This document shows, in pieces, positions 24,518 to 30,451 of a DNA stretch of 37,989 nucleotides; position 1 is the first letter of the stretch; each line of letters starts with the position of its first letter. Both the position numbers and the translations under genes were made by a program. This DNA is from Salisapilia sapeloensis CBS 127946. Taxonomy: Eukaryota > Protista > Oomycota. The DNA is taken from the NCBI GenBank assembly GCA_023334545.1, contig JAADVB010000186.1, forward strand, positions 1 to 37,989, written 5' to 3'. The notes under the pieces are model-generated. The model was not told where the DNA came from and made no database searches. It saw only the letters and a program-made list of their open reading frames with translations.

Positions 24518-27500
24518 CTAGCCCGTCTTGGCTTCGGGCTTAGCTTCGTCCTTCACAGCCTTGACGTCTGTCTTCACGGCTACGGCTTCCGGCTTGACGG
24601 TCTTAGCTTCGGCCTTGGGAGGCTCTGCCTGCTTCGGCTCTGACTTGATAGACTCCACTGGCTTCCCTTCGGCCTTATCAGTAGGTTTCGCAGCGCCATC
24701 TTTCTTTTCATCCTTCTTTTCGTCCTTGTTTTCCTTGGGTTTCCGAGGTTTCTTTACCTTGGGTACAGGCGCTTGACATTTGTCTTCAAATGTCATAACC
24801 TCGCTCCCATTCACTCTCACCTCTGTCTTCATAACAGGCTTTGGTGTCGGGACAGTCGACATGATCGGAACCATCTTGGCGAGGTTCTGGTACGAGCTAC
24901 CGACAGGGAAGGGAGGTACGACTGGTTTTGGTGGTGCCACAGGTACTTGTCTGTACTCCAGTTTGGGTACTCGCAGTCTCAGTTTCCCATGATGATGTGG
25001 CAAGTCCGTCGGTTGACCTTTGACCATGTCATTCCATCGAATGACAAACCGTCGACCTGAGTTTTCCGTCTCCAAGTTTCCACACGAATGTCCTTTCACG
25101 ACATTCTCTTCCACGACAACATTTCCAGAATGGTACAACAGTCGTAAACCAAAGCGACCGTTATTCACGACCTTGTTCCGTCGTAAGACAGCGTTTCCAT
25201 GCCACACAGTCACGCCTGAATGTCTATTTTCAAAGATCGTATTCCGACGCAAGACTAGTCCACCACCAATGAGTAAGACGCCACTACTACCAGCATGATA
25301 GACTTTACAGTCTAGTAGCACAAGTAACGAGTCTTTCGATCCAGAGACACATGCACATGCGTTCCCTCGTAAGCCTCCGTCTAGATCGCACGAGACGACA
25401 CGCAGCCGAGCGTCTTTCACGACGTAGATCAAGTGTTGCCAATTGCGATTGCCACCGCCTTCCTGACGACGACTCAGGTGGATGCCGACAATCATACCTC
25501 CCTTGCTTTCCCACGTCAGCTGAGCACTGGCGTTCGTCATCTGGAGTTCGACATGGGCATTCGGACTCGCCCATAGTCTTAATGGTTTCTTCACTAGCAC
25601 AGGCTTATCGATCGAGTAGACACCACTGGCAAAGACGATCGTGTCTCCTGGTAGAGCGTCATCCACCACTTGCTGCAGATCCAACGGCGCATCGTCCGAT
25701 CGACTGGATACCTTTGTGTGCAGCCGCATGTCACTCGCACTTGTCTGCCACTTCTTGCAGACAGTGCTTGCAGCAAGACGATCAGGTAGAGGTGCAAGAT
25801 ATTGAAAGATAACAAGCAAAGAGGAGGATGGGAGACCTGCGAACCCCTTCTCCCGGCACTCGGCCAGTTCTGCGTTCTTCCGAACGATCGCAGGTTCATC
25901 CCACACTGCTTCCTTCGTGTACTCGTTATAATAGAACGGATGGTGCGTCCGAACGCACTTGAGGATCTTCCAGTCGCTACCTTCGAGATGCCGTCGACGA
26001 CGTTCAAACGCGAGTTTCTTCTTCTCTTGCTTATACAGCTCTTCGTACGTCGTGTCAGGACTCACGTCTCCAGCAATGAGTTCTCCTTCCTTGAGGAGCA
26101 TCTCCTCTTCCTTGGCTTTTGCTTCATCCACTTCATCAAAGTCCACTCGAGCACTCTCAAACTGTGCTTCCACCGACTCTTTCGTCGGTACGTCGTCATA
26201 CAACGGTTCGACTTCTTCTCGGAACCGCAGCGCATATCGATCGACCGCATTCAAGTTACTTTCAAAGTCTGTGAGCGACTTGACCGACGACTTCCACTCC
26301 TGCAGCTTCCGTTCATCCTCTTCCTCTCTCTTCTGTCTCTTGACCGCTTTGCTCGGCTCCTCTGCCTTGCGTTTCTTATCCTCCTCTTCATCTGCTTTAT
26401 CATCAAAGTCCTCTTCATCCTGCTTCGCTTCTTCCTCCGCTCCTCGCATCGCCTTGACGTCTTCTTCATCCTCCACCTGGTTCATCGCCTGCTGCACCAC
26501 TTCATCACTCACTTGCTCTTTATCGAAAAAGTCCGTGGTGAAGTTGCCTTGAGCCATGACAAGCCAGTCCAGCTGCCTCTTCTGCTGTGCTCGAGCCAAG
26601 ATATTCTCCTCCACCGTATGCTTCGTCACGAGACGATAGATGTGAACGTCTCTTGTCTGTCCGATCCGATGCGCTCGATCCTGCGCCTGTGCATCCATCG
26701 CAGGGTTCCAGTCGCTGTCGTAGAAGATGACGCAGTCGGCACCTGTGAGATTGACTCCTAGACCTCCACTACGTGTCGAAAGGATAAAACAAAAGATCTT
26801 GTCGTCCTGATTAAACCTCTCCATCAACCTCTGCCGTCGATCTGCAGGTGTCGAGCCATCGAGACGGAAGTAGGAATGGCCATGGAGGTTTAAAAAGCCT
26901 TCGAGGATATCTAACATGCTGCTCATTTGAGTGAATAGGAGACAGCGATGGTTGCCGGATTTCAAACGACGGAGGAGGATGTCGAGTTGCTGGAGTTTGC
27001 CACAATCGAATTGGAGCAGACGCTTGTCTGGGAAAAAGAGCTGCGTGCGTTTGTGTGCTTCATAGTATGGAGATAGGATGCGACTGGCGACGGGAGTTAA
27101 TTGCGTGTCGATCATGTGGGTTAGACGTGTTTGGATCGATAGAGCAGTGTCGTTGTGGCTAGAGGAAGGGAAGGTGAAGGACATGGTGACGGGACGTGCT
27201 CTGGCTTTCGGGACGTAGCACATAGCGCGAGTGGCAATTGGAAGGTAGGAGCGGATGCGACTGTCAGGGTCTTGGACCATGTCTTTCAACGCATTCGTGA
27301 CTTTGTCACTCTTGCGACTGACGTGCACTTGCATCGCTTGGGAGATGAGGTACGGCATACTAACGAGTCGAAGGAGTTCATCTCCATACGTCGGAGCGTC
27401 TCCACCGACAGCAAGTGTCACTCGCATCTGATGCAGCTGACTCTGTCGTTTCTGTTTCCAATATAAGAGTTTCACAGCTGCTTCTTCTTCCATCGCTTGT

Positions 27501-30130
27501 AGTACATCAGGACGATGTTTATGCTCTTCCTTTGCATCTTCCTGTACGTAGCACTCTGTCGGGTAGTTGTCTAGATGCACGTCTTCCACTAGCAGTTTCT
27601 TTCTACTTTCCATGGAGAATAGACTACATCCTTCTTTACCAGCAATAGACGACCCCCAATACGGCGCATCATAAGCACCTTGATAATTGATCAAATGATT
27701 CGAAAGGAAAGCACAGGCTCTAGGTATGTCGATGGTCATAGGTGGGAGATCCAACGGACAGACGATCGGTCGAGGCTCGAACAGATCTGGATGGTTACAT
27801 ACCTTTCGTAGCTGCATTAAGACGTTCATCATGCTCATAAAGTTCCCTTTTTCATGCAACGCTTTTCGCGTGGATGAGCGACTGATGAAATCTTCATACA
27901 GTCCTCGCTGTCGTTTGCTCAAGTCACAAGTGACAGTATGTTCATGCTTCTCTGGCAATTGTTTCTCGACTTCACTCTTTAGACGCCGAAGAACGAACGG
28001 ACGTATGATCGCATGCAGTTGATCGACTAGTTCACTTTCAGCACCTGCTGTGGCTTTATCTTTCGTTTCGACCATGGCAGTTAAAGGGCTTTGGAACCAA
28101 TAGGCAAAGTCCTTACGAGATGAAAAGACATGGGGCATGAGGAAATGCATGAGTGCCCACAATTCTAATAGGCTGTTCTGCAAGGGAGTGCCAGTGAGTA
28201 ATAGACGTCGTTGCGCGTTAAAGTTGAGCAGCGTCTGCCATCGCAACGATCGAAAGTTTTTAATATGATGCGCTTCGTCTAGAATCAGGTAGAACCACTT
28301 TTTACGTCGAAAGCAATGCGCGTCTTGCACCACAAGTTGATAGCTCGTAATGCACACCTGGAACGCATTCGCTTTACTCCATCCTTGACGCAACTCTTTC
28401 CGTCGTTTCGCACTGCCAAAGTACGTCAGAATCTTAAGCGCCGGACACCAACGTTTGAACTCCATCTCCCAATTCACGAGACAACTCGTCGGGACGACGA
28501 TCAAGTGCGGTCCCCAGATACCTCGTTCACTCGCCAAGTGTGCGAGGAGCGAGATGGTCTGGATGGTCTTTCCGAGACCCATCTCATCTGCTAGAATCCC
28601 ATTCACGCGCTTCTCGCATAGCGTCACGAGCCAATTGACACCTGCCTCTTGGTACTGTCGCAGGGAGAGGCGGGAGGTTAGTAGGAATGGGCGCTTATAG
28701 CCTCTTCGACGGACAATGTCTTCATCTGCTGTCGTTAGTTTATCCATAAACTGCTCTGTGGCAGACTTTTCCAACGTCTCTGGATGATACTTGGCACGTA
28801 GTTCTTCAACGGAAAGCTCATTATCTGCTTCTAGCTCCTGCACTTCGTCTGCGTTCGAGTCACCGTAACGCTCCTCTTCTTCTAGCGTCCTTTCGTCATC
28901 CACTTCCATCACATCTTCTTCAAACTCTGCGTCACTCTCCTGCTTCCCGTCTTCTTCACTAGCAGAAGACTCTGTCCGACCGTAGTAATGTGCTCGTAAA
29001 GCTTCGACATCCATCTCTCCTTCCGCTTTTAAAGCGGCTAACTCGTCCTCGTAATCGTCATCTGCATCCTCTTCCTCCTGTGCTAGAGTCGTCTCGTCAT
29101 CCTGCTCCGCATCCATCTCTGCTTTCGACATTTCAAAGTCTGATCCGTCCTCTTCTTCCTTTTGTACATCTTCTTCTTGCACTGGAATTGATTTCTTCTT
29201 TCGTTTGGAAGGCTTAGGTGGTACGGGAGATTCTGTCGATGCTTTTTCCTGAAAGGATTGAGCAAGGGATGCAGCGTATGACTGGGTTTGAGATACAAGA
29301 GAATGTAAATGACGGTCCATGGCCTCCCGACGGAGCTCATCCGTTTGTAACTTGACCTTGTACTCGATGATTTTATCGATTTTACCCCAGAATTTTTTCA
29401 TATCGCGACCGATCTTGGCGGCCTTACGTCGACGTTTCTCTTCCTCCATCTAGTATACAAAAGAATATGAGTATACTGGCTCAAAAAATAGTTTTACTGT
29501 TTTTATAAAGCATCAGGGTACGATAAAGATCAGTTTTCTTGATAAAAGTACCCATCTGCATCGTACAAATAGCATGCTTCCTGTATGGAACACGAACCTT
29601 GTCTTTACGAGCAGCTCGCGTGGCAATTTTGTTGTGGTGACTGAGTACCGAGGTGGAAAGCAATTTCCCATGCTTAGTACGCCATCGACGTTCCTGTGAG
29701 AAATCTGCTGCCATCCACTCCTATATCCACACGAGAAAAGAATACAACATGAGCTTCTGTCTCTTTCTAAGAAGAGAAAAGAATAGAAAGATACCATTTC
29801 TTGCAGCAAATAGTCCTGGTGAGAACGTTGTAGGCGACTGCCATTCACGTCGACACCCGGCTCGGATACCTTTGTAATTGTTTTCCCCAACGTAAGTTCA
29901 TGGAGGCGCGTCTGGGCTTCATTCTGCTCTTCCTGTAATGAAAAGAGCAATGTTTCTTCGGCTTCACTGTCGAATTGCTCAGCATTGGGAATGTCTTTCG
30001 ACGTTTCTTGGGTATCAGACGATGCGGAGCTGCGTGCAGAATGCGGTCTTTTTGTCGGCGGTTGCGTCACGGCCTCCTGCGCCTCAGAATCACGGGTTCT
30101 CTTGGCCCGCCCACGCGTCTTCGCCGCCAT
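24518..30130 (-). CDS. SWR1: SWR1/SRCAP/PIE1-type SNF2 chromatin-remodelling ATPase with C-terminal WW-like, F-box and beta-helix domains. 3 exons (30130-29795, 29720-29598, 29449-24518)
   Basis: The HSA domain is reassembled across introns 29721-29794 and 29450-29597 (HQDYLLQEM|EWMAADFSQERRW...KDK|MEEEKRRRKAAKIGRDMKKFWGKI). ATPase motifs GILADEMGLGKT, LILDEAHHIKN, LTGTPLQN, split-ATPase insertion, FILSTRSGGLGVNL, DSDWNPAMDAQAQDRAHRIGQ, and post-ATPase NAVDRYALRF. Confidence 0.95.
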
Positions 30131-30451
30131 TCCTTTCACTTTGCTGAACAGCCACGTAACCGCTACTGTTAATTGGGCCAACTTTCAAATAAGCTTAATT
30201 TAAGAGGACATGTGGTAATATAAGATTTCTCTCTTTTGAGGCACAAAAAAGGCATAGCTATTCGATTCATCCTTCCACTTATTTCTTGTACATGTACAGA
30301 TAGCTCTTCACTTAAAATCCATGCTTCTTATGCTTCCTAGTAGACTTCATGGAAAGCTATTCGATTCTTTCTTTATTACCCAATCGGAAGCTAGAATAAC
30401 TTTTATCCAATAATAAGCTGCAGGATACGCAACTCCTGGACAAGTAGCATC

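What the first reader, a model, noticed from the sequence alone, without database searches (positions are those of the whole stretch)
24518..26000. SWR1 chromatin remodeler fused to a WW-like + F-box + right-handed beta-helix module
Seen: in one uninterrupted ORF, the SWR1 ATPase is followed by WKILKCVRTHHPFYYNEYTKEAVWDEP (WW-like, ~25892-25972). Next come LPSSSLLVIFQYLAPLPDRLAASTVCKKWQ (F-box) and LQQVVDDALPGDTIVFASGVY...GVLLIGGGLVLRRNTIFENRHSGVTVWHGNAVLRRNKVVNNGRFGL (parallel beta-helix). Known: F-box plus beta-helix is the architecture of FBXO10/FBXO11 SCF substrate receptors. Yeast Swr1, plant PIE1 and animal SRCAP/p400 lack it. Inference: an H2A.Z-depositing remodeler that may recruit Skp1-Cullin1, coupling histone-variant exchange to ubiquitination on chromatin or to its own turnover. 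I recall a Phytophthora annotation 'SNF2 family helicase/ATPase and F-box protein', so the architecture may be oomycete-wide; I know of no functional study.
Basis: partly seen in the sequence, partly recalled or inferred. Interest (0 to 1): 0.72.

Follow-up and report, generated by a model that had tools for sequence, protein, structure and literature searches.

The report
SWR1 remodeler with built-in F-box module
This oomycete's SWR1 motor, the enzyme type that loads histone H2A.Z in other organisms, really does end in a WW, F-box and beta-helix module like a ubiquitin-ligase substrate receptor; the fusion is shared by oomycetes, diatoms, golden and pelagophyte algae, is named in databases, and I found no study of it.

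Summary
Observation confirmed. A three-exon minus-strand gene (30130..24518, 1796 codons) has a last exon that is one uninterrupted 1643-codon ORF.

Domain order:
- HSA
- split SNF2 ATPase, best matches SRCAP and Swr1
- the conserved SWR1 C-terminal region
- WW, below Pfam's cut-off, but its signature is invariant in an alignment of 25 relatives
- F-box, above Pfam's cut-off; its family profile matches Skp1-bound Skp2, FBXL5 and FBXW7 F-boxes
- a roughly 10-rung right-handed beta-helix (AF2 pLDDT 83; Z 20-24)
- a Lys/Pro-rich tail

It is not an artefact. The same collinear architecture occurs in every named oomycete order, and in diatoms, chrysophytes and pelagophytes. The gene tree follows the species tree. 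Two MMETSP transcriptome ORFs span motor to beta-helix. Plant, green-algal, fungal, amoebozoan and animal SWR1/SRCAP/p400 lack the module.

The WW/F-box/beta-helix triad was not found as a clear stand-alone family. It is an old stramenopile feature of SWR1, annotated since the P. infestans genome ("SNF2 family helicase/ATPase and F-box protein"). I found no paper on it.

Skp1 or SCF recruitment is the most likely mechanism, but it is inferred only.

The parts
29795..30130 (-). Exon 1: ATG plus 112 codons. Acidic/Ser-rich N-terminus; the last residues begin the HSA domain.
   Evidence: Read from the sequence. Frame and GT donor checked by script. Not joined to the other exons in any search.
29721..29794 (-). 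Intron 1, 74 nt, GT..AG
   Evidence: Retaining it would disrupt the HSA match.
29598..29720 (-). Exon 2, 41 codons: core of the HSA domain
   Evidence: Pfam HSA 30.8 bits (cut-off 23), profile positions 21-58, searched alone by reference.
29450..29597 (-). Intron 2, 148 nt, GT..AG
24518..29449 (-). Exon 3: uninterrupted 1643-codon ORF plus stop, running from the end of HSA to the C-terminus
   Evidence: Collinear BLAST to 38 relatives.
27782..28654 (-). SNF2 N-lobe (aa 266-556). Walker A GLGKT, DEAH box and TGTPLQN motif are intact.
   Evidence: Pfam 300 bits. Motifs read. Best PDB matches SRCAP and Swr1.
26993..27781 (-). Insertion of about 263 aa that splits the ATPase lobes (aa 557-819), as in Swr1/Ino80-type motors
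   Evidence: Gap between the two Pfam domains. Only 21-42% identical to relatives.
26660..26992 (-). Helicase_C lobe (aa 820-930), with the QDRAHRIGQ motif
   Evidence: Pfam 87.7 bits.
26000..26341 (-). Conserved SWR1 C-terminal region (aa 1037-1150), also present in plant and green-algal PIE1/SWR1
   Evidence: BLAST coverage 0.6-1.0 in the plant and algal hits, which then end without the module.
25892..25978 (-). WW domain (aa 1158-1186). Prp40/FBP11/TCERG1-like rather than the PPxY class.
   Evidence: Pfam 16 bits, below cut-off. Signature invariant in A1. AF2 three-strand sheet, pLDDT 86-90. Weak PDB matches to PRP40, PRPF40A and PCIF1 WW domains.
25709..25840 (-). F-box (aa 1204-1247)
   Evidence: Pfam F-box-like 33.4 bits, cut-off 24.3. 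Family profile A2 hits the Skp2 F-box at E 9e-9, and also FBXL5, FBXL17, FBXO42, FBXW7, FBXL3 and TIR1. Helical in the AF2 model.
24977..25708 (-). Right-handed parallel beta-helix, about 10 rungs (aa 1248-1491)
   Evidence: Pfam Beta_helix 35.4 bits. AF2 pLDDT mostly 90-98. VIA-align Z 20-24, rmsd 2.2-3.5 A over 220-245 residues, to polysaccharide lyases, alginate epimerases and tailspikes. Foldseek agrees.
24521..24976 (-). Low-complexity Lys/Pro/Val/Ala/Glu-rich tail (aa 1492-1643). Disordered, poorly conserved, contains basic NLS-like runs.
   Evidence: Composition. pLDDT below 50 in the part modelled. 11-29% identity to relatives.

Best explanation
Shown: this is one genuine gene for the catalytic subunit of a SWR1-type (H2A.Z-exchanging) chromatin remodeler. 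In stramenopiles that subunit has carried a C-terminal WW, F-box and beta-helix module since before oomycetes and ochrophyte algae diverged.

Inferred:
- The F-box docks Skp1, and through it Cul1-Rbx1, onto the SWR1 ATPase. The remodeler would then double as an SCF substrate receptor.
- The beta-helix would be the substrate-binding surface, as the CASH beta-helices are in FBXO10/11.
- The Prp40/FBP11-like WW would bind a proline-rich or phospho-Ser-Pro partner.
- The outcome would be ubiquitination of a protein at sites of H2A.Z deposition, SCF-dependent turnover of the remodeler itself, or both.

Confidence differs by layer. About 0.95 that the fusion is real, single-gene and ancient. About 0.5 that it acts through Skp1/SCF. 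The figure given below is for the whole statement.
For: Single ORF with all domains. HSA found in the upstream exon. SWR1/SRCAP class.

Conservation and inheritance:
- Collinear architecture in 38 word-search hits and in all named oomycete orders, diatoms, chrysophytes and pelagophytes.
- The gene tree mirrors the species tree.
- Uninterrupted ORFs in other genomes (L001).
- MMETSP transcriptome ORFs P0067 and P0113 span SNF2 to beta-helix.

F-box quality:
- Canonical F-box positions (L-P, hydrophobic helix 1, P-x-R, V-C-x-x-W) are invariant or nearly so from oomycetes to diatoms.
- The family F-box profile matches F-boxes crystallised on Skp1: Skp2 at E 9e-9, plus FBXL5, FBXL17, FBXW7, FBXL3 and TIR1.

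Fold: a confident AF2 model (pLDDT 82.9, pTM 0.72) with a beta-helix at Z 20-24. Its F-box plus helix together superpose on FBXO11-family Atlas models (TM 0.64 over residues 2-338) and on plant SKIP5.

The module is as conserved as the other non-catalytic parts of the protein.
Against: - No Skp1 binding, ubiquitination or H2A.Z data exist for any member.
- In Aphanomyces the F-box is degenerate: LP becomes LS, one species has a 9-aa deletion, and Pfam gives no hit.
- Two proteins of unknown taxon that branch below the oomycete + ochrophyte clade have SWR1 plus a homologous beta-helix but no detectable WW or F-box. The beta-helix may therefore be the primary add-on.
- F-box proteins can bind Skp1 without forming an SCF ligase.
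- No sequence-level link to FBXO10/11 was found.
Confidence: 0.5

Rival explanations
1. The F-box recruits Skp1 as a structural, non-ligase subunit of the stramenopile SWR1 complex, with no Cul1. Known precedents, from memory, are Skp1 in PRC1.1 through KDM2B, in RAVE, and in CBF3 through Ctf13. The WW and beta-helix would be protein- or chromatin-docking surfaces.
For: The F-box evidence is the same as for the main reading. Nothing in the sequence speaks to Cul1. The module sits on a large scaffold protein of a multisubunit complex, which is the situation in which non-SCF Skp1 complexes are known.
Against: The best profile matches are to classical SCF receptors: Skp2, FBXL5, FBXW7 and TIR1. 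F-box followed by a beta-helix is the layout of bona fide SCF receptors FBXO10/11 (established knowledge).
Confidence: 0.2
2. The beta-helix, with the WW, is the functional addition: a binding or even enzymatic domain acting on chromatin proteins or a glycan-like modification. On this reading the F-box is a linker helix bundle that no longer, or never, binds Skp1.
For: - SWR1 plus a homologous beta-helix occurs without WW or F-box in P0116 and P0130 (hhalign probability 97.6).
- The Aphanomyces F-box is degenerate.
- The nearest solved folds are polysaccharide lyases and epimerases.
Against: F-box consensus positions are kept from oomycetes to diatoms, and C and W are invariant in 18 diverse members. 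The profile hit to the Skp2 F-box at E 9e-9 covers the whole domain. No catalytic motif of the lyase or epimerase families was identified. Sequence identity to them is 7-17%.
Confidence: 0.15
3. Artefact or separable genes: an assembly chimera, read-through of two adjacent genes, or an internal promoter so that the F-box/beta-helix protein is made separately from the remodeler.
For: Many database entries are C-terminal fragments that begin just upstream of the WW.
Against: - One open frame of 1643 codons.
- GC and GC3 show no composition break at the junction; only the 17-codon WW-to-F-box helix stands out.
- The same collinear ORF occurs in dozens of species across more than four algal and oomycete classes.
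- Transcriptome-derived complete ORFs span the junction (P0067, P0113).
- The fragments all still carry SWR1's own pre-WW region, so they are pieces of the fusion gene. An additional short isoform cannot be excluded.
Confidence: 0.04

Closest known systems
Canonical SWR1-class ATPases (yeast Swr1, human SRCAP, plant PIE1)
   Same: HSA domain, split SNF2 motor with a long insertion, intact catalytic motifs, and a conserved post-ATPase C-terminal region shared with PIE1.
   Different: None of them carries WW, F-box or beta-helix. The module finds nothing in their full-length sequences. The SANT or AT-hook tails of PIE1 and SRCAP were not detected here.
FBXO11 / FBXO10 (C. elegans DRE-1): SCF receptors with an F-box plus CASH beta-helix
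   Same: An F-box directly followed by a right-handed PbH1/CASH-type beta-helix. F-box and helix superpose together on FBXO11-family Atlas models (TM 0.64, 277 residues). Protein-language-model neighbour, score 0.89.
   Different: - One helix of about 10 rungs instead of three CASH domains.
- No UBR zinc finger.
- Preceded by a WW domain and a 1150-aa remodeler.
- No sequence-level hit to FBXO10/11, so this is an architectural analogue, not a shown orthologue.
FBH1 / FBXO18 (F-box DNA helicase)
   Same: An ATP-driven nucleic-acid motor and an F-box in one polypeptide. From established knowledge, FBH1 forms an SCF ligase acting on RAD51 at its site of action.
   Different: FBH1 is an SF1 UvrD-type helicase with an N-terminal F-box and no beta-helix. 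Here the motor is an SF2 Snf2 remodeler with a C-terminal F-box. The two are unrelated in sequence.
KDM2A / KDM2B (FBXL11 / FBXL10)
   Same: A chromatin enzyme that carries an F-box and so brings Skp1 onto chromatin (established knowledge).
   Different: JmjC demethylase with CXXC, PHD and LRR domains. No ATPase, no WW, no beta-helix.
Plant F-box protein SKIP5 (SKP1-interacting partner 5)
   Same: A short F-box plus beta-helix protein. Atlas structural match at TM 0.65 by target over model residues 50-291, and feature score 0.92.
   Different: A stand-alone protein of about 260 aa, not fused to a remodeler. Homology not tested at sequence level.

Membership tests
SWR1/SRCAP subfamily of Snf2 ATPases | N-terminal HSA domain | tested here: met
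   Exon 2 alone: Pfam HSA 30.8 bits, cut-off 23. Relatives have HSA too.
SWR1/SRCAP subfamily of Snf2 ATPases | Split ATPase with a long insertion between the lobes, and closest similarity to Swr1/SRCAP rather than INO80, p400 or others | tested here: met
   263-aa gap between SNF2-rel_dom and Helicase_C. SRCAP 777 and Swr1 662 bits against INO80 479 and p400 454. Falls inside the SWR1 clade, with plant PIE1 outside the stramenopile clade.
SWR1/SRCAP subfamily of Snf2 ATPases | Intact catalytic motifs (Walker A, DEAH, motif VI) | tested here: met
   GLGKT, DEAH, TGTPLQN and QDRAHRIGQ read.
SWR1/SRCAP subfamily of Snf2 ATPases | H2A.Z-H2B for H2A-H2B exchange activity within a SWR1 complex | not testable with these tools
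   Biochemical property, inferred from orthology only.
F-box proteins | F-box motif of about 40-45 aa scoring above the curated threshold | tested here: met
   PF12937 at 33.4 bits, cut-off 24.3. Family profile hits the Skp2 F-box at E 9e-9, and also FBXL5, FBXL17, FBXW7, FBXL3 and TIR1.
F-box proteins | Conservation of the consensus L-P, helix-1 hydrophobics and V-C-x-x-W across the family | tested here: met
   Invariant or nearly invariant columns in A1 and A2. Exception: the Aphanomyces F-box is degenerate.
F-box proteins | Binds Skp1 | not testable with these tools
   No multimer prediction or experiment was available.
FBXO10/FBXO11 family | F-box followed by a CASH/PbH1 right-handed beta-helix | tested here: met
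FBXO10/FBXO11 family | Three tandem CASH domains and, in FBXO11, a C-terminal UBR-type zinc finger | tested here: not met
   A single helix of about 10 rungs. No zf-UBR or other zinc-finger hit.
FBXO10/FBXO11 family | Sequence orthology to FBXO10/11 | tested here: inconclusive
   No FBXO10/11 among the 38 word-search hits, although proteins of their length were eligible. None recognised in the top 150 of the exhaustive search. Only fold and feature similarity.
WW domain | Two Trp 20-23 residues apart plus a C-terminal Pro, on a three-stranded sheet | tested here: met
   W1160, W1183 and P1186 are invariant in A1. AF2 strands at model residues 11-15, 22-26 and 31-33.
WW domain | Pfam WW above the gathering score | tested here: not met
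   16.0 bits against 26.9 in the window and 14-21 bits in relatives on fresh scans. Five relatives carry a precomputed PF00397 hit (P0017, P0019, P0027; P0039, P0041).

The most novel reading that the evidence does not exclude
In stramenopiles the SWR1 complex is itself a cullin-RING ubiquitin ligase (an 'SCF-SWR1'). The ATPase subunit docks Skp1-Cul1 through its F-box and uses its beta-helix and WW to select a chromatin-bound substrate, such as evicted H2A-H2B, H2A.Z, RNA polymerase II or a SWR1 subunit. Histone-variant exchange and ubiquitination would then be mechanically coupled in one machine. This arrangement would have been kept for the whole history of oomycetes and ochrophyte algae.
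Probability: 0.35. Interest if true: 0.8.

Novelty: new variant of a known kind. Interest (0 to 1): 0.6.

Why it matters
SWR1 is the conserved machine that installs H2A.Z at promoters. To my knowledge, no SWR1/SRCAP/PIE1 studied so far carries a ubiquitin-ligase adaptor.

A fusion kept in crop- and fish-pathogenic oomycetes and in diatoms, major marine primary producers, works as a 'Rosetta stone'. It predicts a functional link between H2A.Z exchange and SCF-type ubiquitination, or at least Skp1. That link could exist as separate proteins elsewhere, for example FBXO11-like receptors in animals.

It is directly testable in tractable diatoms and oomycetes. It also adds to the pattern, noted elsewhere in this genome, of stramenopile F-boxes fused to nuclear machinery.

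The architecture has been visible in database names since the P. infestans genome annotation. The advance here is the delimitation, the dating and the structural support, not first sight.

Tried and rejected
Tools that gave nothing:
There is no RNA or spanning-read evidence from this organism.
- The careful IQ-TREE run timed out. I used FastTree instead, which gives weaker support values.
- The taxon of P0116 and P0130 could not be recovered.
Full report
**Observation.** The minus strand carries an uninterrupted ORF at 24518..29449, 1643 codons. Pfam finds these domains on it:
- SNF2-rel_dom, aa 266-556, 300 bits.
- Helicase_C, aa 820-930, 87.7 bits.
- A weak WW, aa 1158-1186, 16.0 bits against a cut-off of 26.9.
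- F-box-like, aa 1204-1247, 33.4 bits against a cut-off of 24.3.
- Beta_helix, aa 1347-1455, 35.4 bits against a cut-off of 25.9.

**Gene structure.** The ORF begins inside an HSA domain, so I read upstream. I found two small exons with GT..AG introns, all in frame:
- Exon 1, 30130..29795, ATG plus 112 codons.
- Intron 1, 74 nt.
- Exon 2, 29720..29598, 41 codons.
- Intron 2, 148 nt.
- Exon 3, 29449..24518.

Exon 2 searched alone scores 30.8 bits for HSA against a cut-off of 23. The gene therefore encodes about 1796 residues.

**What the motor is.** The first 1000 residues of exon 3 match human SRCAP (777 bits) and yeast Swr1 (662 bits) far better than INO80 (about 479) or p400 (454). The lobes are split by a 263-aa insertion. 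The Walker A, DEAH, TGTPLQN and QDRAHRIGQ motifs are intact. This is an SWR1-class ATPase, apparently active.

**What the tail is.** I aligned the C-terminal module of the window with 24 relatives (A1).
- WW: W1160, W1183, P1186 and the N-x-x-T-x-E-A core are invariant. Weak solved-structure matches are to Prp40, PRPF40A and PCIF1 WW domains, and relatives give faint TCERG1-WW hits. From memory of those families, this points to a proline-rich or phospho-CTD binding type rather than PPxY. That is a lead only.
- F-box: the positions L-P, helix-1 hydrophobics, P-x-R and V-C-x-x-W are invariant or nearly so. A profile of 18 diverse family F-boxes (A2) matches F-boxes that were crystallised on Skp1. 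These are Skp2 at E 9e-9 over the full domain, then FBXL5, FBXL17, FBXO42, FBXW7, FBXL3 and TIR1.
- Fold: AlphaFold2 with A1 gives a confident model, mean pLDDT 82.9 and pTM 0.72. It shows a three-stranded WW, a helical F-box and a right-handed beta-helix of about 10 rungs.
- Beta-helix matches: it aligns to polysaccharide lyases, alginate epimerases and phage tailspikes at Z 20-24, rmsd 2.2-3.5 A, over 220-245 residues (Foldseek).
- FBXO11 likeness: in the ESM Atlas, the F-box and helix together superpose on FBXO11-family models (TM 0.64, 277 residues, model residues 2-338) and on plant SKIP5. The feature search lists the same neighbours.
- Tail: the last roughly 150 residues are a Lys/Pro/Ala/Glu-rich disordered stretch.

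**Is it one gene?** GC and GC3 show no composition break at the junction; only the 17-codon WW-to-F-box helix stands out. A word search with the module region returned 38 proteins, all with SNF2 plus F-box and/or beta-helix, and all collinear with the window protein. One of them is P. infestans "SNF2 family helicase/ATPase and F-box protein, putative". A related Logan contig carries the whole thing as one ORF (L001).

A second search with the ATPase region listed the 120 best SWR1 homologues. I scored each for coverage of the window's segments.
- With the module:
  - Oomycetes:
    - Peronosporales and Pythiales: Phytophthora, Peronospora, Hyaloperonospora, Nothophytophthora, Pythium, Globisporangium.
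    - Albugo.
    - Saprolegniales: Saprolegnia, Achlya, Aphanomyces.
  - Diatoms: Nitzschia, Seminavis, Mayamaea, Skeletonema, Thalassiosira, Epithemia, Cyclostephanos.
  - Chrysophytes: Ochromonadaceae CCMP2298, Epipyxis.
  - Pelagophytes: Chrysophaeum and, from the exhaustive search, Aureococcus.
- Without the module: land plants, green algae, a fungus, Balamuthia and an animal. Several of these do share the preceding SWR1 C-terminal region (aa 1037-1150).
- The module also finds no match in the full-length SRCAP, Swr1 and p400 sequences held in the PDB set.

Two MMETSP transcriptome ORFs span SNF2 to beta-helix. They are P0067, whose cluster contains a Pseudo-nitzschia model, and P0113. 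This is transcript-level evidence in diatom relatives.

A FastTree of 37 sequences reproduces the species tree. It places the window within the peronosporalean oomycetes, outside Saprolegniales. Inheritance therefore looks vertical, from the common ancestor of oomycetes and ochrophytes.

**Is the module known on its own?** The exhaustive profile search gave 14,398 hits at E up to 1e-3 and 169 at E up to 1e-30. Among the best 150, every protein with the WW plus F-box pair also carries SWR1's pre-WW region or is an obvious fragment. The rest are WW-repeat proteins or generic PbH1 beta-helix proteins, four of the seven checked being fused to kinase or TIR domains. No FBXO10/11 sequence was recognised. 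The triad is therefore a signature of stramenopile SWR1. Its likeness to FBXO10/11 is architectural and structural, not shown orthology.

**Nuances.**
1. Pfam does not detect the Aphanomyces F-box. A. invadans has LS for LP, and A. stellatus has a 9-aa deletion.
2. A. euteiches gene models seem to lack the F-box. Its genome encodes it in frame without stops, and the models remove 324 nt as an 'intron'.
3. Two EukProt proteins of unknown taxon (P0116, P0130) branch below the oomycete + ochrophyte clade. They have SWR1 plus a homologous beta-helix (hhalign probability 97.6) but no WW or F-box. The beta-helix may be the older addition.
4. Peronosporales carry an insertion of about 170-200 aa, rich in Thr/Pro/Ser/Ala, inside the beta-helix.
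5. The module is about as conserved as the other non-catalytic parts. The beta-helix is 32-54% identical within oomycetes and 21-24% to ochrophytes. The F-box is 27-48% and 26-43% respectively.

**Mechanism.** Shown: the domain architecture, the fold, the conservation and the phyletic range.

Inferred: the F-box binds Skp1, and the beta-helix and WW bind substrate or partner. I put about 0.5 on an SCF-type role, meaning local ubiquitination or self-turnover. I put about 0.2 on Skp1 as a non-ligase subunit, about 0.15 on a vestigial F-box with the beta-helix and WW as the working parts, and under 0.05 on an artefact or separable genes.

Precedents from established knowledge:
- FBH1, an F-box plus helicase that forms an SCF ligase.
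- KDM2A/B, chromatin enzymes with an F-box.
- FBXO10/11, F-box plus CASH beta-helix receptors.

**Literature and earlier notes.** I found no paper that describes this architecture. The FBXO11 papers found describe only the animal protein.

Earlier scan notes on this genome, all unchecked by me, list other F-box fusions to nuclear machinery. They also list a p400/PIE1-like gene with a dead motor and an F-box + SNF2 + RING protein. I did not test these. They suggest that F-box grafting is a habit of this lineage, and that the fused protein may be the only active SWR1-class motor.

**Limits.**
- No multimer prediction was possible.
- The species is not identified.

Noticed in passing
A1 columns ~290-520 (e.g. 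P0024:1810-1983, P0020, P0029): Phytophthora, Peronospora and Hyaloperonospora carry an insertion of about 170-200 aa, rich in Thr/Pro/Ser/Ala, between rungs of the beta-helix. Pythium insidiosum has a shorter one. The window, Globisporangium-like sequences, Saprolegniales and diatoms have none.
   Followed up: partly
L002:6330-6653: Aphanomyces euteiches gene models (P0050, P0073, P0090, P0091) splice out 324 in-frame nt that encode the F-box and the first beta-helix rungs. The genome reads through without stops and aligns to A. invadans, so this is probably an annotation artefact.
   Followed up: yes
P0116:1510-1768 and P0130:1560-2000: Two EukProt proteins of unknown taxon branch below oomycetes + ochrophytes. 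They are SWR1 plus a homologous beta-helix with no WW or F-box. P0130 has a C1/FYVE-like zinc finger instead, and an N-terminal TPT transporter piece that looks like a chimeric gene model.
   Followed up: partly
L002:8524-8546: In A. euteiches the gene just downstream of the SWR1/F-box gene encodes a RING-H2 protein with a zf-rbx1 hit. The window and L001 show no equivalent neighbour, so this is probably chance.
   Followed up: no
window 30131-30451: The SWR1 start codon (30130, minus strand) and the PIMT-like gene (30452, plus strand) are divergent and only about 320 nt apart, i.e. a shared bidirectional promoter region. An earlier scan note reports a 13-bp direct repeat there.
   Followed up: no
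window 24521-24976: The C-terminal tail is Lys/Pro/Val/Ala/Glu-rich with K-P-K and K-x-E-A-K type repeats, reminiscent of linker-histone tails. It could be a non-specific DNA-binding or nuclear-localisation element. It is not conserved in sequence among relatives.
   Followed up: no
This suggests an intron or frame break within Helicase_C (the N-terminal piece keeps about a third of it) that the window's gene lacks.
   Followed up: no
same genome, other pieces (scan notes s1-296585, s1-296912): Unchecked first-reader notes report a p400/PIE1-like paralogue with a catalytically dead SNF2 motor and a separate F-box + SNF2 + RING polypeptide in this genome. Both bear on how this lineage combines remodelers with ubiquitin machinery.
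   Followed up: no
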